A DNA stretch of 61,334 nucleotides, the filler included, from Platydemus manokwari (Eukaryota), in NCBI GenBank assembly GCA_037951405.1. It is 6 parts of 6 records of this genome, joined end to end, with 100 filler letters (N's around TTAATTAATTAA, not from the genome) between each part and the next. Parts side by side here need not be neighbours in the genome. Positions count along the whole stretch, not along the records: positions 41,084 to 51,206 come from JBBMOY011166102.1; 5 more parts are not named here. One strand, written 5' to 3'. Position numbers and translations under genes: made by a program. The number at the start of each line of letters is the position of its first letter. Position 1 is the stretch's first letter. Shown here piece after piece: positions 41,590-51,206 of the stretch. The notes under the pieces are model-generated. The model worked only from the letters and a program-made list of their open reading frames with translations, had not been told where the DNA came from and did no database searches.

Positions 41590-43220
41590 TTATACAGATC
41601 AATCCTTTGGCTTTTTAACCACTCACTCGAATTGCGCTGTCCAAGACTGGTCAGTACAATGGTCAGTATCGTGTCAACAAGTTTTTTGAAGCTAAAGTCG
41701 GCACTCTGTGAAGCACCAATTTTGGATGTCCCAAGAGAAAATAGGATATTTGTACTCGAGTTTTGATTAAATCGGAGCTGTTCTAAAGCCAAGTTACTGA
41801 AAAAGGAACAGAGGTAGTTATAGCCTATTGGTCTCGATCATTGACTAGTAACGAGAAAGGATACTTTGTTACCAAGAAGGAACTACTGGCTATCCACGAG
41901 TATGTTATTTACTTTAGGCAATACCTGCATGGGAATAAATTGAAGAAGGAACAGAAGTAGTTTCCAGTGCAAGACGAGACGCGATGGAACAAAGACAGAA
42001 AATCCGAAAACCAAATATTTAGCATAAATACAAATAAAATCGGAGTTAATGCAGAAAATACAGGATGCACAGCATTAAGATGCAGAAATAGTGAAGACAT
42101 TCAGATTTCTAAATTATGAAATAACTCTAACTAGCGCGGAGTTCTGGAACAAACATTCACTTTCGAGAATAAAAGATAAGATGAAAGTGGTCGACAATAT
42201 CCTGGTGCTGGAGAAAGCGAAAGGTTTGGCTGCTATAATACCGAAAAATTTTGCCGCTCAATTTGTCAAGACAATTCACGAGGAGCTCTGCTACTTAGGA
42301 TCAAAGAAAACCTTCTCATATTCGGACTACAGTTTTTATTGGTCTAACATGTTCAACACTATCAAACAGATACTGAAAGAATGTATTATATGTGCAAAAA
42401 GAAAGGAGTTCTTTCTCTCTCGGTTAGGCTCTGAGTTTCAAGAGCAAATCGTGGTGAACATTGCTCAAATGGACATGGTGCATAGTAACAAGAAGTATCT
42501 AGTAGTTATTATCGATAGATTCAGCAAGCTAATGAGCCTCACTGCTACATCTAAGCAAGATGGAAAGACAATCTGCTAGTCATTTTAAACCAGTGGATTT
42601 ATCGTTTTGGAAAACCAAACAGAATTCTATCTGATAACGGGAAACTATTTGGAAGCAAATTTATGAAGGAAGCGTGTTCAAAGTTGGATATCAAACAAGA
42701 ATTCAGGTCACGATACCATCATCAATCGAACGGGCTAGCTAAAAGAGTCATCAGGACGATACGAGATATGATAACAGCTACTTTAAAGGGTATGAGCCAT
42801 GAGAAAAATTGGGCTGAATTGTTGCTTGTGATAGAGTTTCGCATCAACGCAACACATCAATCAACAACGAAATTCTCGCCTTTCGAGAAAATCTACGGGC
42901 GGAAGATCAATGTTCATACAGATGTGAGTCACAAGATCTAAACTCGATATGATATTACAACAGCAACTAGAGAAAACTCTAAAGTCGCGGCCGACATAAT
43001 GTCTAACCGAGACAGGGGAAAAACAACACATCGAGCTTTTCAGGTGGGAGAGAAGGTGCCAGTTCGCCTAGATCCCCATGACAGGAAGAAGAATGGATAC
43101 CAATACGGAGCACCCTATCAAATTACCGGATTCAAGTCAGACAGACAACTGGAAATTCAATTCCCTCATGCGATAAAATCCAGACAATTAGAGTGGCTGA
43201 AACGATTTAGCGGGTCTTAA
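41590..43220 (+). mobile_element. Ty3/Gypsy pol relic: RNase H and integrase, with frameshifts and stops
   Basis: IAYWSRSLTSNEKGYFVTKKELLAIHEYVIYFRQYLHG (RNase H); HEELCYLG...CIICAKRK (integrase Zn finger); IDRFSK, WIYRFGKPNRILSDNG, YHHQSNGLAKRVIRTI, FSPFEKIYGR (rve core); FQVGEKV...GAPYQI (GPY/F-like). Confidence 0.92.
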
Positions 43221-43771
43221 GAGTAGTAACGTGATTAATTAAAGAAACACGTTGTATTTGTTTAAATATTTGATTGGCGGATTAATGTAGTTTTTTAAAA
43301 AAATATTACGTCTGAAATTGTTTATGACGTAACTAATATTAATTATAACAAATATTTTTAATCGATTATATTAAAAATATTTAATATTTGTATTTATAAA
43401 ATGGTCTTTCTCAAACCATTACTGTAATCTCTCAATTTGTTAAAATAATGGGAAAAATAATATAAAGTTATATTATTTGTACCGTGAAATTATGAAACAT
43501 GAAGAAGTGTTAGCAACAAACACATTATTTAAAAATTAGCGAAAATTAAATGTTTTTCAAAAAAATGATTCATCATTAAATTCTTGCCGATTTTATTATC
43601 TTTGATTGTATCTCCTAATACCTCCATAGAATGATGATAATGTTTATTTATTTTATTATTTTAAAATTCAATTTAAATGATAATTTAAACCAATAATATT
43701 TTTAATAAATCATTTTAATTTCAATTTTTATTTTATTTATAAAATATTATTTATATTATCAAATATAAATC

Positions 43772-45073
43772 ATGTCAAATATGTCGTTGGAAAATAAACT
43801 GAAAGCCATTGAAATGTATCAAGAAGGCGCTAAGTTGAAAGATCTCGTGAATATGTTTGAAACGCCCATACTAGAACTTATGTACTGCATAAACAACAAA
43901 GCACAAGTAATAGACCAAATGATTAAAAGCACAGATAAAATTACATCAGAAGAACTGGAAAGATTGGAAAAAATTGCTACGGGAAGGAGAAATACAAAAC
44001 AAAAAGAATTTTCAATCGATAATAAGTTGAAAGCCATTGAAATGTATGTAGATGGAGTCAAATTTGAAACAATAGCGAAAACATTAGAAATGTCTCCACA
44101 GGAAATTAAGTATTTCAAAAGATATAATATCAAAATTTTAGAAAAGATGGCAATAAACACAAATCAAATGACATCTGACGAAATAAAAAGATTGGAAAAT
44201 ATCACAAATCAGAGCAGAAAGAATAGGTTAAGAAAACCGAACTCTATCGATATTAAGTTAAGAGCCATTCAGATGTATATACAAGGAAATAATGTGAAAG
44301 AGATTGCAGATACATTGAAAATATCGGTTGACTTGGTTTCACACCTGGTAAATGATAAAACTAAATTGTTAGACAGAATCTCTAAAGATACGAAGGAAAT
44401 GGCTCCAGCAGAAATGAAAATTTTGGAAAAGCTCACAAATCGGAATAAAAAAGTTAAGTATTGGCAACCGAATTCTATCGAAGATAAGTTAAAGGTTATT
44501 GAGATGTATCAAGAAGGTGAAAAGGTGAAAACAATAGCAGATAAATTCCAAATGACTTCACAACAGGTTGTGTATTTTGTAAGAAATAAAAATAAATTAT
44601 TGGAAATGATAACAAAAGACATAGATCAAATGACTCCAGAAGAAATAAAAAGATTGGAAAAGCTCACAAAATGGAATGGACGCATGAGAAGATTCAAACC
44701 GAATCATTTTTCTCTGGAGACTAAGTTAAAGGCTATTAAGATGTATGAAGATGGAAGTAGGTTAGTAGAATTAGGAGATATATTCAAAACCTCTCCCACG
44801 GCAATTAAAAATTGGATTAAAAATAAAACTGTATTATTATATAAAAGCTTATCAGAAGAGTTGATAAAATTGGAAAATATCACTGATTTCCGACCCAATC
44901 CAAATGATCATGAAACTACGTCCATTGAAAAATTGGAAGAGAAAAGTGCAAATGACGTATCATTTGAAAACAACCAAACGAAATCAAATTATAATCTTAG
45001 ATCAAGAAATCTGAAAAGGAAAATTACTGAGATAGAAGAATTGGATAGACTCAAAATAAGACGAATTAATTAA
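43772..45073 (+). CDS. Intronless 433-aa protein of five tandem 76-79-aa HTH repeats (CENP-B N-terminal/pipsqueak-like); putative DNA-binding protein
   Basis: Repeats start at aa 5, 81, 158, 235 and 314 with consensus S(I/L)(D/E)xKLKAIEMYxxGxxxxxIAxxFxxSxxxxxxxxxNKxKLL; long intact ORF in about 25% GC DNA; basic C-terminus YNLRSRNLKRK; AATAAA near 45192. Confidence 0.85.
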   Translation: MSNMSLENKLKAIEMYQEGAKLKDLVNMFETPILELMYCINNKAQVIDQMIKSTDKITSEELERLEKIATGRRNTKQKEFSIDNKLKAIEMYVDGVKFETIAKTLEMSPQEIKYFKRYNIKILEKMAINTNQMTSDEIKRLENITNQSRKNRLRKPNSIDIKLRAIQMYIQGNNVKEIADTLKISVDLVSHLVNDKTKLLDRISKDTKEMAPAEMKILEKLTNRNKKVKYWQPNSIEDKLKVIEMYQEGEKVKTIADKFQMTSQQVVYFVRNKNKLLEMITKDIDQMTPEEIKRLEKLTKWNGRMRRFKPNHFSLETKLKAIKMYEDGSRLVELGDIFKTSPTAIKNWIKNKTVLLYKSLSEELIKLENITDFRPNPNDHETTSIEKLEEKSANDVSFENNQTKSNYNLRSRNLKRKITEIEELDRLKIRRIN

Positions 45074-45965
45074 ATGAGAGATACGAAAATTGAATTTGTT
45101 ATTTAATATATGTTTAGTAATAATAATTAGTTTTAATTTTTTGACTTTGTATATTATTAAAACATTTAATTTAAAAGAAGTCATGTTAACCAATAAAAAT
45201 TAAAAATTCAGTAAATAATATTTTTTCATATTAAATTCGAATTCATTAAATTAATATTTAGTGGATTTCAAATTATACAATTTCGAGACTGAAAACTTTT
45301 TTTCTGCATTACTCAAATTTATATGAAAAATTAAAATGCATTTCTTTTTATTATCTTTTTAGCCTTGAAATTTTCTTTAATTTTTATATCTTCTATTTCT
45401 ACTTTTCAAAAGCTTGTTTGTGAAAGTTAGAAACATTTACAATAAATTCCATTAAATATCTCACCCCCAATCTCTATTTTTGTGAGATTTATAAAAATTT
45501 ATCAAAAAATAAATAAATAAATAATTAAAATAAATATTAGTAATTACTAAACATAATCAAATTACGAAAATCAAACATATTCAAATAAAAGTATGAAATC
45601 AATGGGTTTTATATGAATTAATTATTATATGAAGGATTTTATATGAATCAATTTAATGATGGGCTCGGTATTTTCATTATTGAAACTGGAACTTTCCACC
45701 AATTTTTAAAATGTTATTATTCCATCAATTTTACTAACTAAAAAAGTTTATAAAATCCTTTGTAAGGATAATATTTCTTAAATAAAATTCGAATACAAAT
45801 AATACCTTAATGTCTCACCAAAAAAGATTATAAAATGTTATTTAAAAATGATGAGTATCGATCCAGACCTGGATTGTCTCTAGCAGAATAGCACTGCATA
45901 CATTTAGTCTCTCACTGGTGAGAAAGGACTCGCCCTGCGAGGTTCTTACGGCGAAATATCGAATT

Positions 45966-46208
45966 ACTTCATCATATACCGCTCAAGCCAAGTATGTCTT
46001 TGAAGACCGATTTCATGCTGACACTGTCCGGCTTTACAACTTCGTTGTTCTTTCAGTCAACAGCAGGTAATCCCTTTGAGCAGAATTTATTGCCAGATTT
46101 TTGGACCAGCAGTAAATGAGTAGAATTACTGTTCTAAACTTCATCCTATACCGCTCAAGCCAAGTTTCCTTTGAAGACCGATTTCATGTTGACATTATCG
46201 GGCTTTAC
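45966..46208 (+). repeat. Direct duplication of about 72 bp (45966-46037 and 46138-46208)
   Basis: Both copies read cttcatc.tataccgctcaagccaagt.t..ctttgaagaccgatttcatg.tgaca...ggctttac. Confidence 0.85.
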
Positions 46209-47388
46209 TCCTCCACCAGCCAGAAACAGTTGAAAGTGTCATTTGGTGGTCATTGTTGTATAAACGTTGCTGATGAATCACTCTGCGGGTTTGTAAAAAA
46301 AATTTGTAGTTAAGTATGCTGTGATTGGTTGATTGCTTTGCCTGTATGGTTATGTAAATATACAAATGCTTAAAATTCAAAATTAATGTTTCCACTGTGC
46401 ATAATCGTTTTTCTTTTTCAAAATTTTGTCTCTACTATGGAGATTTTTATTACAATGGGAATTTAAAATGGTTTTTGAGTTGTATTATTTTGATAGATAT
46501 TATAAACTAATTTTACAATATTACTTCGGATTTAATTTATTTCATTTTATTTATGTCAATCGCAGACCCTCCAGAATTTTACATTAAAATATTTAATATT
46601 ATTTCATGAAAAATACTTTCATACATGGGCAACTATTATCAGATCATTGTATTTTCAAATTATCCCAAACCCCAATATATAAATTCAAATATCATGATCA
46701 AAATAACTGAAACTTAAAATATATAATATTCACAATAATTCGATACCTATAAATAAATAACAGATGACATATGAAAGCTTTTTCTGTGTTTAAGCTGATG
46801 CACTAAAAATAATTTACAACCCGCATTTGGAATTAATATCACTTAACTCTGGAGAAAGAAGAATGCCTAAGAAAACTCAATGTTAATAAGTATGTCAAGT
46901 GTTATATACAAAATTTGACAAATTTAATTTTAGGTAAAAATTGATTAGTAAATCGTTTTTTAAGTTATGTAACACAAATTTACTCATTGTTCCATTCTGA
47001 TAGTTGAATTGAATTCTACATTGAATGATTGGAAATGTCTGCCTAAAATTGGGTTTACTTGTGTTATCATGGTAATATTAGAGGTTACAACAGTAATCAA
47101 AAACAAAGTATAATTAACATGTTTATGCAAATAATTACTTCTTTGTCAATATGCAACGACTAATTTCTTTCTTAACTCTCAGTAATATATTTAGAGCTTT
47201 ATTATTTTGGTAGTTGTTTTCATTAATAAACTTTTTCACGGCTTGTTTCTTAATAAAATATTAGGTAGTGTTTTGTCCTTGTTAAAGTGATCATTTAACA
47301 ATACTCAATATTCCATAATATATTTCCAAATGATAGATAATACCAACTTTAATAATATCAAACAACAAACTAGAATTCAAACTAAAAA

Positions 47389-48360
47389 TTATGGTTTCCA
47401 AACGACATTTATTGGCCAATTTTGATGACCTATAATGTTCAACTCAGAACCCTCTAATGTGTATGGCCTGAATTTGTGTCGCTTGAATAAAAGTATTAAT
47501 TCAATAATATCTGCATTGTCTTTTATCCAGGCCCATTCAATAACTATTGCGAGGAATTTGAAATTTTTGAACATCAATTCCGATTTTCGAAAAGCTGATA
47601 TTTCATGGCCTTCTATATCGATTTTCATAATGATATTCTTATGTTTCAAAAATGGTACCAAATCATCCATATAGATCCCTTTTACGCTCTCAGGGTTGGA
47701 ATTATTTAACTTTACAATATCTATATCTGTTTTCATTCCGAAATTATCGTGAGAATCAGTTAAGGCATTATTTATTGTTACTACTTGAGAAGTTAAATTA
47801 TTCTTAACAATTGTTTCATATAATACTTTAATATATAGTAAATGTGCATCGACAGCAATCACATCAAATCCAAGGCAAGCCATATTTAGTGTATGGATAC
47901 CTATGTTGCATCCGATGTCGATGAAATGAAAATCTTGATTTTTACTTAGTATAGTCAAACTGCTAAACACATCGTCTTCAAATGAAAGTCCACGTCTAAA
48001 TAAATTAGACAAAAAATCCGTACTGTTACTAACTGATACTTCCATAGACTTTTGGCCGCATTTTCTTTCAACCATATCATATCCTTGTAATTTACTACTG
48101 TTGTAAACATTAACGAATTTTGATAAATGTAGCTTGGACTTATTATCGAATAGAAAATCATTTTTTAAGGAATATGTTGAATATGACGGGATGCTTTCAG
48201 ATGGTTTTACATTTTCAAATGTAGTTGTTGTATTTTCTCTAATATATATAAGCCTTTGAATGTTTTTCTCGTCACTTTCTGTTGTATAATTGAAAACAAT
48301 AATTCCACCAATAATAAATAGAATAAAGAGTACGAGGAAATAATGAAATTTATTCAGCAT
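47389..48360 (-). CDS. FkbM-family (Methyltransf_21) SAM-dependent methyltransferase, type II membrane protein, 323 aa, intronless
   Basis: N-terminal TM FLVLFILFIIGGIIVF and stem with NxT/S sequons; motif I FIDIGCNIGIHTL; VIAVDA; INNAL; IIMKIDIEGHE; IVIEW are FkbM hallmarks. Confidence 0.88.
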   Translation of the reverse strand: MLNKFHYFLVLFILFIIGGIIVFNYTTESDEKNIQRLIYIRENTTTTFENVKPSESIPSYSTYSLKNDFLFDNKSKLHLSKFVNVYNSSKLQGYDMVERKCGQKSMEVSVSNSTDFLSNLFRRGLSFEDDVFSSLTILSKNQDFHFIDIGCNIGIHTLNMACLGFDVIAVDAHLLYIKVLYETIVKNNLTSQVVTINNALTDSHDNFGMKTDIDIVKLNNSNPESVKGIYMDDLVPFLKHKNIIMKIDIEGHEISAFRKSELMFKNFKFLAIVIEWAWIKDNADIIELILLFKRHKFRPYTLEGSELNIIGHQNWPINVVWKP

Positions 48361-48879
48361 TTATATTTTTTAGATAATCGATTGAATAATTTATTATCAA
48401 TAAATGTAAAATAACCTTAGAAATACATTTTGATTAAATATATTATTATTAAAGTTAATCGAAGAGTTAATAAAATGAAATAAGCAGTCTTAAATTATAA
48501 ATAGTTAATCTTTGTAATTGATTGAAACAAAATAATAAAAAACAACATGTGAGAATTTTTAAATGAATTTAATTTTTAAAGATTTAATTCAAATTCCATA
48601 AAATTATATTTGTTTGTTTAAAAATGTAATATGGTCTTATGATTTTTCAGTTCGTTTTCAATGCGTGCTTCACAAAATAATAAAATCTTAGTATGTATTT
48701 TCTTCATTAACTATTTCATATTAAAACGAAAGCATAACTATCTATAAACTGTAAATATTATGAAATCAATAAAGATTAAAAATACTGAGAAAAAATGAAA
48801 ATTAAAATGTAATCTATATTCCTCAAAAATAACAAATTCAATTACAAAAACATTATTCAAATCCACTTCAAATTCTTCA

Positions 48880-51152
48880 CTATTTTGGCATTTTGAAATT
48901 TGCAAGCTCCATTTCTCTTTTTCGAATCATTGCATAGCAAATAGATCCACCAATTATCACAACATTACTTAACCACCACAATACACTTTTAATTTCATTA
49001 AAAATGAAGTATGCAATGATTGTCTGAGCGCAAGCTTTAGCAGTTCCAGAAACGCTGTGAGTAAGAGGACTTGTAACTTTGATTTGCAGACCAGTTACAT
49101 ATCCGATTGCAAAACCAAACAAACCACTAGTTATCATTAAAAACCAAAAATGTGTGCTAAAAACAAAATAATATCATGATTATTAATACACTGATTTTGA
49201 ATAATAAATTCGATATTATTTATGAATAATTAAAATGAGGTAGTGTTTATTTTTTTAATATTTTTTATCATTAAAATAATATAAATATTATTAACAAAGA
49301 TTTATAACTTGTTTAATGTATAACTTATAGTTTGTTAATAGTAAAAACTTCAATAAAAATATTTCATAAATAGTCCCATAAAATAATGTTAACATAATTT
49401 TAAAATTGTTAAAGCTTAAATGCGAGTTTTTGACTGAATTCGGTGCAATTACGAAGTTGAAGCTTTCAAATAAAACGACTTATCTTGAAACATTTAATTA
49501 GGTTATTTATCGCTTTTTAATTTCAGTATATGAACCGGAATTATCCATTCCACTGAATCAGAGTCAATTAATTTTCTAATTCAATCTACAATTCAAATAT
49601 TTATTATTTATATCTTTATGAAATATAATTCAGAAATGAATCTATATTATCAATATTGTACACTTCGGTTTTTCATCATAGTAAAAAGGTCTCACTTTTT
49701 AACTGAATTACGTGAACAAAGAGCGAATAAAAAATTGACGTGTTAATCAGCCGACATAAATTTCATTAAATTCTTATCAATTTTAATACACAGCCATGTT
49801 TGTCGTGATTTATTCAGTGGTGATTTATAAACTCTTTTGAATTTCACAGAATTTAACAATCTTATTAATCTTTGTTAATTAATTAATTTTAGCGTGTGGT
49901 GAAATTAAAAAATGTTTTGTTTTGACGATATCATTTAAAGATTTCATATCTTAAAAGTTGTTCTTGGTAATAAGTTTATCTGAAGTAAAATTAAAAATTA
50001 TTTTTATTCCGTCAAGGACTAAGGAAATTTTAACCCGAACTAATATTTCTGCTCATAATTACACTTTCCAAACAATAAAATCTGGTCAAATTTTATAATT
50101 TTTAACAAATAAACTGAAACATTTTAATGTAAATAGACTGATTTTATCAGCTCATTAAGGTTTCTGTTTCCTTTTGTCCAAACTCATTCAATAATTATTG
50201 CGAGGAATTTGAAATTTTTGAACATCAATTCCGATTTTCAAAAAGCTGATATTTCATTCAATATTTCATTCTGTACACACATAATTTGTTACCGTGCCAT
50301 ACACATTTATAATTTTTGATGTTTGTAACGTGGAAGTAATATTTGTTTTAATAATTGGTTTAAAATATATATGAAAATAAATCAAATATGATAAAATCTT
50401 CACGGGTTTTTGATTTGCCATCGTTTCCCATTAAGTAATTCAAAATATTTATTCCTTCAAATAGAGATAATATAAATAATACTAATATTTATTCGCTATA
50501 TTTCATTTTAAATAATCTATTAATAATCAATAAATGTATGAATTGTATTTTAGAAAATAATTTATAATATTATAAATAATCAAACTAAAAAAATATCAAA
50601 TATTTTATGAGAATAATATTATTAACAAGTTAATTTTAATTCCAGACAATCTAGAAATTGTGCTTCTTTTTATAATATAGCTGGTTTTAAAGAATATTTC
50701 TCAGCTGCTCATATGATTGAATAATAACGCTTAAAATGGAAGCCCAATGAATTTATCAAAAATTATTTATCAAATATCAATCAATATCGTTTGTATTTAA
50801 TTTAAATTTTTATGAATGTTATTATTTTAAATAATATTTATTTAATAAATAAAATGTCAAGGATAGATATATCGTTATTAATGGGCTATTTTAAAGCTAA
50901 TAAATTTTATTACAAATTAAATGGATCCTACATCCTACTTCAGAAAATGTGGAAAATTCTTTAATTCCTCGATTTCTCCAGTCAGATAAATAATGGGAAT
51001 GAAAATAATGCAAGCATTAACATTGTTGTAAAAGCACAATATCCAAACATCGTCATTGACGACCGAAATTTTCTTTCTTGTATAGATGGAATTCAGAGCA
51101 ACAAAAGCACTGGCACCCACGCCAAATATAACCCCTCTCCATGAGACATAGC
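48880..51152 (-). CDS. SLC35C1: GDP-fucose transporter, last two exons (51152-50939, 49156-48880); 5' part beyond the contig end
   Basis: [26 protein letters not shown]...FYNNVNAC...[52 protein letters not shown] matches the SLC35C1 signature; GT-AG phase-2 splice is in frame. Confidence 0.93.
50172..50257 (-). pseudogene. 86-bp duplicated fragment of the FkbM methyltransferase CDS inside the SLC35C1 intron
   Basis: Near-identical to 47521-47606 (cattcaataa.tattgcgaggaatttgaaatttttgaacatcaattccgattttc.aaaagctgatatttcat). Confidence 0.85.
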
Positions 51153-51206
51153 CTAATAAGTAAATAGTTGGTTCAAAATTTTCAAACAGATTATCAGATA
51201 TATATA

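What the first reader, a model, noticed from the sequence alone, without database searches (positions are those of the whole stretch)
43772..45073. Tandem array of five transposase-type HTH modules with variable recognition helices: a candidate modular DNA-binding protein
Seen: an intact intronless 433-aa ORF made of repeats of 76, 77, 77, 79 aa and a truncated fifth. Helix 1 (SIDxKLKAIEMY..G) and the linker helix (QMTxxEIKRLEKLT) are conserved, while the predicted recognition helix differs in each repeat (PILELMYC, SPQEIKYF, SVDLVSHL, TSQQVVYF, SPTAIKNW). Each full repeat ends in a basic arm (GRRNTK, RKNRLRKP, RNKKVK, RMRRFKP). Known: CENP-B and pogo/Tigger transposases have one such N-terminal HTH followed by a second HTH and a DDE domain; Drosophila pipsqueak has four shorter psq repeats. 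Here there is no second HTH type and no DDE domain. Inference: a domesticated transposase DNA-binding domain amplified into a repeat array that could read a long composite site, such as TE termini, satellite or centromeric DNA. I do not recognise this architecture.
Basis: partly seen in the sequence, partly recalled or inferred. Interest (0 to 1): 0.75.

Follow-up and report, generated by a model that had tools for sequence, protein, structure and literature searches.

The report
Five-fold CENP-B-type HTH repeat protein
An intact, low-copy, intronless gene encodes a protein made of five tandem copies of the DNA-binding helix-turn-helix found at the start of pogo/CENP-B transposases, most likely a transposon-derived DNA-binding protein; this is an unusual variant of a known theme (as in Drosophila Pipsqueak), not a wholly new architecture.

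Summary
Chance would give such an ORF with P about 1e-17.

Pfam assigns the units to the transposase-type HTH families HTH_23, HTH_28 and CENP-B_N. A predicted single unit superposes best on CENP-B(1-129) bound to DNA.

The gene is low copy, whereas the integrase fragment upstream is roughly 1000-fold more abundant. Its codon usage matches the neighbouring host genes. The repeats have near-saturated synonymous sites but conserved protein sequence, which indicates purifying selection.

- The architecture is not unprecedented. An exhaustive HMMER search found 22 relatives, several of them pure tandem arrays of the same unit (6 units in the best hit, 8-9 in bacterial-like proteins), and none has a DDE domain.
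- Helix 3 shows relaxed constraint, not diversifying selection.

Expression, the DNA target and the host taxon could not be tested.

Verdict: probably a pogo-derived multi-HTH DNA-binding protein, a new variant of the Pipsqueak/CENP-B kind, of moderate interest.

The parts
43772..45073 (+). Intact intronless ORF of 433 aa (stop included). The protein has net charge +19 and 19% K+R.
   Evidence: Pfam HTH_23/HTH_28/CENP-B_N
43778..44005 (+). Unit 1 (aa 3-78). It has an HTH core plus helices 4 and 5, has no N-terminal basic arm, and ends in GRRNTKQK. It is the most diverged unit and gives no Pfam hit on its own.
44006..44236 (+). Unit 2 (aa 79-155). It ends in SRKNRLRK. Alone it gives only weak Pfam hits.
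44237..44467 (+). Unit 3 (aa 156-232). Alone it matches HTH_23 at 25.8 bits, above the cut-off.
44468..44704 (+). Unit 4 (aa 233-311). Alone it matches CENP-B_N at 24.2 bits, above the cut-off. It was modelled alone and its best structural match is 1hlv_A.
44705..44914 (+). Unit 5 (aa 312-381). It lacks 7 residues between helix 4 and helix 5, keeps the family's Trp in helix 3, and is not followed by a basic arm.
44915..45070 (+). C-terminal tail (aa 382-433). It is modelled with low confidence, has a basic cluster RSRNLKRK (possible nuclear localisation signal, inferred) and a predicted long helix at aa 400-432.

Best explanation
The ORF is a real, selectively maintained, low-copy gene for a DNA-binding protein. 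Its five modules each descend from the N-terminal helix-turn-helix (CENP-B_N / Psq type) of a pogo/Tigger-like transposase.

Each module has four parts: a basic arm, a three-helix HTH, a fourth helix (KNKxKLL) and a fifth linker helix (QMTxxEIKRLEKLT). The basic arm is supplied by the end of the preceding unit. It is equivalent to the N-terminal arm that lies ahead of helix 1 in CENP-B.

Inferred mechanism: helix 3 of each module enters the major groove and the preceding basic arm enters the adjacent minor groove. The helical spacers string five modules along the DNA. The protein would then read either a long composite site or several copies of a reiterated short motif, for example in repetitive, transposon-derived or AT-rich DNA.

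Units 1-4 probably arose by internal duplication within this gene lineage.

Shown here: the ORF, the repeats, the HTH family and fold, low copy number, and constraint on the protein. Inferred: DNA binding, groove contacts, the type of target, and host (domesticated) status.
For: - ORF and repeats. The chance probability is about 1e-17.
- Family: HTH_23 E 1.2e-18, HTH_28 E 3.4e-15 and CENP-B_N E 5.1e-11, all above their curated cut-offs. Units 3-5 match individually.
- Family consensus from 53 units: xIxEKLKAIKMYENGESLKDIASKFNVSPSTIKYWIKNKEKL.
- Fold: the AlphaFold model has HTH cores at pLDDT about 90 and five helices per unit. pTM is 0.31, so the modules look independent.
- Single-unit model: the best match among 48,161 chains is 1hlv_A, CENP-B(1-129) with DNA (Z 6.0, rmsd 1.6 A over 55 residues). 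IstA, Brinker DBD and Tc3 are among the next rows. Foldseek probabilities are 0.94 for 1hlv, 0.99 for the Sin HTH and 0.91 for the paired domain.
- Selection: between units pS is 0.42-0.87 and pN is 0.28-0.41; dN/dS is 0.27-0.57 in eight of the nine pairs where it can be estimated, and 0.95 for units 4-5. Helix 1 is the most constrained. Units this diverged would not remain open without selection.
- Copy number: summed contig depth is 40-120 over the ORF, against a single-copy level of about 25-36. Over the integrase fragment at 41600-43345 it is 20,000-65,000. One contig of 684 nt is 85% identical over 44283-44938, which points to a paralogue.
- Codon usage: the RSCU correlation is 0.71 with neighbouring host genes and 0.40 with the integrase fragment. 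GC3 is 0.31, against 0.27 in the neighbouring FkbM-type gene and 0.42-0.47 in the fragment.
- No relative carries a transposase catalytic domain.
Against: - There is no expression evidence. The only public run that holds the sequence is not RNA.
- The exact protein is absent from a collection of 15 billion sequences. The neighbouring FkbM-type protein is absent too, so this says little.
- Structural Z-scores of 5-6 are within the range common for small helical domains (note). Foldseek gave no E-value at or below 1e-3.
- Units 1 and 2 do not reach any Pfam threshold alone.
- Four of the five units have lost the family's conserved helix-3 Trp. This could mean a changed or weakened DNA contact.
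- No candidate target sequence was identified.
- Relatives come from short, unannotated, singleton contigs, so orthology and conservation across species are unknown.
Confidence: 0.6

Rival explanations
1. The ORF belongs to a low-copy mobile element. It could be an accessory DNA-binding protein, or the remnant DNA-binding part of a pogo-like or other DNA transposon. In that case it serves the element, for example by binding its ends, rather than the host.
For: The HTH type is the one used by pogo/Tigger transposases. The gene is intronless. At least one paralogue of about 85% identity exists in the same genome. It sits in a repeat-rich neighbourhood, with an integrase fragment upstream and a multicopy repeat at about 46060-46640. 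One bacterial-like relative is labelled 'transposase-like protein' by its source.
Against: No convincing terminal inverted repeats flank the ORF. The best pairs are AT-rich, 26-33 nt and 77-79% complementary, among 89 such pairs in the piece. Neither the protein nor 2.3 kb of downstream DNA holds a DDE or other catalytic ORF. Copy number is about 2-4, not hundreds. Codon usage matches host genes. None of the relatives examined carries a catalytic domain.
Confidence: 0.2
2. It is a silent relic. The ORF was once functional and is intact by recent history only, with no present expression or function.
For: No RNA evidence could be obtained. The sequence is not in the protein collection. Units 1 and 2 are degenerate relative to the family profile. 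dN/dS between units 4 and 5 is 0.95.
Against: A fully open run of 433 codons in DNA with 8.6-8.9% stop-codon probability per codon cannot persist long without selection. The hydrophobic core positions of all five HTHs are intact. The listed indels in the paralogous contig are a 3-nt insertion and a compensated +1/-1 pair, so they keep the frame there. Not all indels were listed.
Confidence: 0.12
3. The array does not bind DNA. The HTH-like three-helix units would serve as a helical repeat scaffold for protein or RNA binding.
For: The protein is all-helical and repetitive. The helix-3 Trp is lost in four units. Whole-model Foldseek hits are generic helical proteins.
Against: The net charge is +19 and a basic arm precedes four of the five HTHs, as in CENP-B and paired-type domains. 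pTM of 0.31 indicates that no packed solenoid is predicted. The best unit-level matches are DNA-bound HTH domains.
Confidence: 0.05

Closest known systems
Drosophila Pipsqueak and the Psq/CENP-B HTH superfamily (Siegmund and Lehmann 2002, as cited in PMC10027918; the Dan paper is PMC11178893)
   Same: It is a pogo-transposase-derived HTH used as a DNA-binding module, repeated in tandem within one protein and without a transposase catalytic domain. Lineage-specific expansions of such transposon-derived factors are reported across Metazoa.
   Different: There are five units rather than four. The unit is 76-79 aa rather than about 50 aa, because each carries two extra helices and a basic arm. There is no BTB or other partner domain. 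The Pfam HTH_psq model did not appear among hits at E up to 1, whereas CENP-B_N, HTH_23 and HTH_28 did.
CENP-B N-terminal domain and pogo/Tigger transposase HTH1 (PDB 1hlv)
   Same: It is the best structural match of a single unit (Z 6.0, rmsd 1.6 A over 55 residues). Pfam CENP-B_N scores above its cut-off. A basic arm precedes helix 1.
   Different: CENP-B and pogo have one such HTH, followed by a second, different HTH (Tc5 type) and a DDE-derived domain. Here the first HTH alone is reiterated five times and both other domains are absent.
Uncharacterised tandem-HTH proteins in public metagenome and assembly data (P0001 with 6 units; P0005 6; P0006 5; P0009 4; bacterial-like P0002 8, P0004 9, P0010 9)
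   Same: They have the same unit, the same beads-on-a-string layout and no other Pfam domain. P0001 is 39% identical, with E 1.4e-31.
   Different: Their period is 50-62 aa, against 76-79 aa here. The conserved linker helix QMTxxEIKRLEKLT plus basic arm is particular to the window protein. Some relatives (P0015, P0018, P0022, L001 ORF) instead carry a shared C-terminal helical domain that the window protein lacks. None has a known function or a known organism.
Bipartite HTH domains of Tc1/mariner transposases and the Pax paired domain (PDB 1u78, 1tc3, 1pdn)
   Same: Several transposase-type HTHs are joined by a linker that tracks the minor groove, and together they read a longer site. These structures appear among the structural matches.
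   Different: Those have two non-identical HTH subdomains. Here there are five homologous ones. Sequence similarity is weak.

Membership tests
Pfam CENP-B_N (PF04218), the pogo/Tigger/CENP-B N-terminal HTH | Profile score above the curated gathering cut-off of 21.2 bits | tested here: met
   The whole protein scores 42.5 bits, E 5.1e-11. Unit 4 alone scores 24.2 bits. Unit 5 scores 18.2 and unit 3 scores 14.2, both below the cut-off. Units 1 and 2 give no hit.
Pfam CENP-B_N (PF04218), the pogo/Tigger/CENP-B N-terminal HTH | Three-helix HTH fold that superposes on CENP-B residues 1-60 | tested here: met
   The unit 4 model against 1hlv_A gives Z 6.0 and rmsd 1.6 A over 55 residues, rank 1 of 48,161 chains. 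The Z-score is modest for a small helical domain.
CENP-B / pogo-derived proteins (full architecture) | A second HTH (HTH_Tnp_Tc5) and a DDE_1-derived domain after the first HTH | tested here: not met
   No such Pfam hit at E up to 1. No further ORF lies downstream.
Pipsqueak (Psq) family | Match to the HTH_psq profile (PF05225) | tested here: not met
   HTH_psq is absent from the hit list at E up to 1. The related BrkDBD profile matched 4 of 16 family members. The Brinker DBD structure 2glo gave Z 5.4.
Pipsqueak (Psq) family | Tandem reiteration of the HTH within one polypeptide | tested here: met
   There are five units.
Pipsqueak (Psq) family | Sequence-specific DNA binding by the repeat array (GAGA-type sites for Psq) | not testable with these tools
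   This needs EMSA, SELEX or ChIP.
Domesticated (host-co-opted) transposase gene | Single or low copy, not bounded by element termini | tested here: met
   Depth is 40-120, against about 30 for single copy and 2e4-6e4 for the adjacent retroelement. No credible terminal inverted repeats were found.
Domesticated (host-co-opted) transposase gene | Purifying selection | tested here: inconclusive
   Comparison between units gives pN below pS, and the ORF is intact. No orthologue or population comparison was possible.
Domesticated (host-co-opted) transposase gene | Expression, and syntenic orthologues in related species | not testable with these tools
No eukaryotic genome collection was available.

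The most novel reading that the evidence does not exclude
The protein is a natural modular DNA reader. Each of the five HTH modules would specify its own subsite of about 6-10 bp through the variable exposed residues of helix 3 and its basic arm. The rigid helical spacers would set the register. The array and its paralogues with other unit numbers would then read composite sites of 40-50 bp, for example a satellite or the ends of a transposon family, in a way that could be recombined, somewhat like zinc-finger or TALE arrays.
Probability: 0.12. Interest if true: 0.75.

Novelty: new variant of a known kind. Interest (0 to 1): 0.42.

Why it matters
Transposase DNA-binding domains are a recurrent source of new transcription factors and chromatin proteins. 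Examples are CENP-B, Pipsqueak, and the lineage-specific HTH-Psq and CENPB expansions described in PMC10027918.

This gene shows a different route. The first HTH of a pogo-type transposase, together with its basic arm and a helical spacer, is reiterated five times with nothing else attached. It has been kept under constraint at low copy number.

The search also uncovered a small set of uncharacterised proteins built the same way, with 2-9 units, in AT-rich eukaryote-like and bacterial-like contigs. Tandem arrays of this HTH may therefore be an overlooked architectural class.

If the modules bind DNA independently, the family offers a simple system for asking how multi-HTH arrays read long or repeated sites. 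If it is silent or belongs to a mobile element, it is an ordinary by-product of transposon decay.

Tried and rejected
- Word-index homologue search with the protein found nothing. With a family alignment it found only P0007 and two near-identical proteins. The lysine/asparagine-rich composition defeats the word filter.
- PDB sequence searches found only designed repeat proteins. 8vd6 'CAP repeat' and 7mcd come from protein design (PMC12339374 cites 8vd6). No natural relative appeared.
- Foldseek with the whole 433-aa model returned generic helical proteins such as albumin and sigma factors. This is meaningless for a multi-module chain with pTM 0.31.
- The ESM Atlas gave only sub-threshold leads, with a best score of 0.79.
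- Scanning viral contigs with the repeat profile gave no relative. The JGI metagenome scan gave one locus, L001, a 201-aa single-HTH relative. Alignment A3 was too diverse for locus scans.
- Rfam and tRNA scans of the piece found nothing.
- The bacterial-type promoter and terminator scan was at the level of shuffled controls and is not relevant to a eukaryote.
- I considered that the ORF is an extra gene of the upstream LTR retroelement, which lies on the same strand about 550 bp upstream. I rejected this because the multicopy signal stops at about 43350-43540 and the ORF is about 1000-fold less abundant, with different codon usage.
- I considered the 171-172 nt spaced duplication at 45966-46208 as a possible satellite target. 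It is only a two-copy local duplication inside a dispersed repeat.
The genomic context of the relatives and earlier notes could therefore not be consulted.
- The host taxon ('flatworm') could not be verified.

Full report
**1. The observation**

The piece 41084-51206 has no N and is 27.8% G+C. The ORF listing reports an ORF at 43772..45073 on the + strand, 433 aa with an ATG start. A TAA lies in frame two codons upstream of the ATG.

The anchor KL[KR][AV]I[EQK]MY recurs at residues 9, 85, 162, 239 and 318. This cuts the protein into units of 76, 77, 77 and 79 aa and a shorter fifth unit, followed by a 52-aa tail.

Ten columns are invariant among the five units: S3, K7, L8, I11, M13, Y14, G17, E59, L63 and E64 of unit 4. 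At DNA level the units are direct repeats spaced 228/231/231/237 nt and 61-72% identical. They are old enough that Tandem Repeats Finder misses them.

With the local composition, stop codons make up 8.6-8.9% of random triplets. An open run of 433 codons therefore has P of about 1e-17, and 1000 shuffles never exceeded 115 codons.

**2. What the units are**

- **Pfam, whole protein.** HTH_23 has E 1.2e-18, HTH_28 E 3.4e-15, CENP-B_N E 5.1e-11 and HTH_7 E 7.3e-10. All four score above their curated cut-offs, and no other kind of domain is present.
- **Pfam, single units.** Unit 3 reaches HTH_23 and unit 4 reaches CENP-B_N. Unit 5 is just below threshold. Units 1 and 2 give nothing convincing.
- **Whole-protein model.** AlphaFold2 with a 16-row alignment gives five helices per unit, HTH cores at pLDDT about 90 and weaker linkers. 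pTM is 0.31, so the modules are independent and not packed into a solenoid.
- **Single-unit model.** A model of unit 4 (pLDDT 76.6) was aligned to 48,161 PDB representatives. The best match is CENP-B(1-129) bound to its DNA box (1hlv_A, Z 6.0, rmsd 1.6 A, 55 residues). IstA transposase, the Brinker DNA-binding domain and Tc3 transposase are among the next rows.
- **Foldseek.** It found nothing at E 1e-3 or better. Tight local superpositions were seen on the Sin recombinase HTH (prob 0.99), 1hlv (0.94) and the paired domain (0.91).

These Z-scores are modest for a small helical domain. The fold evidence corroborates the profile evidence and does not stand alone.

Each 'basic arm' at the end of a unit lies directly before helix 1 of the next unit. 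This is the position of the basic N-terminal arm of CENP-B_N-type domains (sequence; general knowledge of CENP-B and paired-type HTHs). The natural module is therefore arm, three-helix HTH, helix 4 (KNKxKLL) and helix 5 (QMTxxEIKRLEKLT). Unit 1 lacks an arm.

**3. Relatives**

The word-index search found nothing. The exhaustive HMMER scan of 1.84 billion representatives found only 22 proteins at E 1e-3 or better. The best is P0001 (367 aa, 39% identity, E 1.4e-31).

A profile of the window's HTH cores finds multiple units in these hits:

| Protein | Units | Note |
|---|---|---|
| P0001 | 6 | period 61-62 aa |
| P0005 | 6 | |
| P0006 | 5 | |
| P0009 | 4 | |
| P0003 | 4 | |
| P0002 | 8 | bacterial-like, has an N-terminal hydrophobic, signal-peptide-like stretch by eye |
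| P0004 | 9 | bacterial-like |
| P0010 | 9 | G+C-rich |

Pfam finds only HTH families in them and no DDE, rve or other catalytic domain.

The eukaryote-like hits are lysine/asparagine-rich singletons from short ENA, Logan or JGI contigs of 1-3 kb. One JGI metagenome locus, L001 (22-24% G+C), encodes a 201-aa relative with one HTH plus a C-terminal helical domain. P0015, P0018 and P0022 share that domain and the window protein lacks it.

The consensus of 53 units is xIxEKLKAIKMYENGESLKDIASKFNVSPSTIKYWIKNKEKL.

Tandem HTH-only arrays of this unit are therefore not unique to this gene. What is particular here is the long 76-79 aa period, created by the conserved fifth helix plus basic arm.

A tree of units places units 1-4 together and unit 5 apart, near units of P0001. 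This suggests internal duplication of a unit that already had the spacer. With 42 columns it is only indicative.

**4. Real, host-resident gene or transposon cargo?**

Contigs of the only public run that holds the sequence were laid on 41600-47400 at 80% or higher likeness.

| Region | Summed depth |
|---|---|
| Integrase fragment, 41600-43345 | 20,000-65,000 |
| 43540-43733 | 80 |
| ORF | mostly 40-120; 488 in the bin 43734-43927, which borders a skipped low-complexity stretch |
| Single-copy contigs | about 25-36 |

One 684-nt contig matches 44283-44938 at 85% identity. Two of its listed indels are a 3-nt insertion and a compensated +1/-1 pair, so there is at least one diverged paralogue that keeps the frame at those places. 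Not all of its indels were listed.

The ORF therefore lies outside the high-copy retroelement and is present in a few copies at most.

No credible terminal inverted repeats bracket the ORF. The candidates are AT-rich, 26-33 nt and 77-79% complementary, among 89 similar pairs.

Codon usage resembles the neighbouring genes (RSCU r 0.71, GC3 0.31 against 0.27) and not the integrase fragment (r 0.40, GC3 0.42-0.47).

Between units, synonymous sites are near saturation (pS 0.42-0.87) while pN is 0.28-0.41. Where it can be estimated, dN/dS is 0.27-0.57, and 0.95 for units 4-5. Together with the intact frame, this indicates purifying selection on the protein through most of its history.

**5. The 'variable recognition helix'**

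By region, pN/pS is as follows:

| Region | pN/pS |
|---|---|
| Helix 1 | 0.33 |
| Helix 2 | 0.66 |
| Helix 3 | 0.67 |
| Helix 4 | 0.55 |
| Helix 5 | 0.57 |

Helix 3 is the least constrained, but no more so than helix 2, and nothing exceeds 1. Across the family the buried positions of helix 3 (S, I/V, W, K) are conserved and the exposed ones vary. This is the ordinary pattern of HTH paralogues. Four of the window's five units have replaced the family's Trp by F, C or L.

The data allow different specificities per module. They do not show diversifying selection.

**6. Mechanism proposed**

The most likely reading (about 0.6) is a transposon-derived DNA-binding protein. Helix 3 of each module would sit in the major groove and the preceding basic arm in the minor groove. 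The helical spacers would set the spacing. Five modules together would bind a long composite site or reiterated short motifs.

The net charge is +19, and a basic cluster in the tail (RSRNLKRK) would fit nuclear import. All DNA-contact statements are inference by analogy with CENP-B, Brinker, Tc3 and paired-domain complexes.

Rivals:
- cargo or remnant of a low-copy mobile element (about 0.2);
- a silent relic (about 0.12);
- a scaffold that does not bind DNA (about 0.05).

**7. Comparison and novelty**

The closest named precedent is Pipsqueak, with four tandem Psq HTHs derived from pogo transposase. Lineage-specific HTH-Psq and CENPB expansions are documented across animals (PMC10027918; PMC11178893).

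The window protein passes the CENP-B_N profile and fold tests. It fails the full CENP-B/pogo architecture (no second HTH, no DDE) and does not match the HTH_psq profile.

I rate it a new variant of a known kind. The unit and the principle of tandem reiteration are known. The five-fold array of a 77-aa arm-HTH-spacer module with no partner domain is not described in the literature I could search.

**8. Limits**

- No RNA run was available.
- No eukaryotic genome collection could be searched, so the taxon, orthologues and full paralogue set remain unknown.
The data show only an AT-rich eukaryote with intron-containing neighbouring genes and a retroelement at roughly a thousand-fold depth.

Noticed in passing
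window 42091-43220 (+), multicopy signal from at least 41600 to about 43350-43540: This is a degenerate LTR-retrotransposon integrase split over three frames. Integrase_H2C2 has E 1.1e-10 and there is a weak rve hit. G+C is 37-45% against about 28% for the piece. Summed contig depth is 20,000-65,000 against about 30 for single-copy DNA, so this element family is present at roughly a thousand-fold excess in this genome.
   Followed up: partly
window 47389-48360 (-): This is an intronless 323-aa ORF with an N-terminal hydrophobic segment. It gives weak methyltransferase hits (TehB E 1.9e-06; FkbM-type Methyltransf_21 at 23.0 bits, just above its cut-off). It is probably a membrane-anchored FkbM-family methyltransferase gene. 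The exact sequence is absent from the 15-billion-protein collection.
   Followed up: partly
window 47494-47606 and 50145-50257: A 113-nt stretch near the 3' end of the methyltransferase ORF recurs 2.65 kb away at 84% identity, and an inner 35 nt is 97% identical. The second copy lies between the two putative transporter exons. It is a local fragment duplication of unknown meaning.
   Followed up: no
window 48880-49137 (-) and 50935-51120 (-): Two short ORFs look like exons of a nucleotide-sugar/triose-phosphate transporter (TPT/SLC35) gene. The first aligns to the C-terminal end of the Pfam TPT profile, but only at E 0.019. This implies an intron-containing host gene next to the intronless HTH gene.
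   Followed up: partly
window about 45870-46640: This dispersed repeat has depth up to about 3000 at 46256-46449. It contains an internal two-copy duplication spaced 171-172 nt (45966-46037 against 46138-46208, 90-96% identical). It is G+C-richer than its surroundings. No tRNA or Rfam match was found.
   Followed up: partly
P0015, P0018, P0022 and L001:336-941: A subset of the relatives combines 1-3 HTH units with a shared C-terminal helical segment (motif around SDYF..I..RY..L, or NLVERIKYLETIL in L001). It has no Pfam match. It may be a dimerisation or effector domain of this otherwise uncharacterised family.
   Followed up: no
P0002, P0004, P0016 (bacterial-like relatives): These proteins consist of 5-9 near-identical HTH_Tnp_1-type units of about 55 aa (FTxEQK.EAIRLV.EG...). 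P0002 has an N-terminal hydrophobic, signal-peptide-like stretch by eye and sits on a 2.66-Mb contig. They are an unexplained bacterial tandem-HTH architecture.
   Followed up: no
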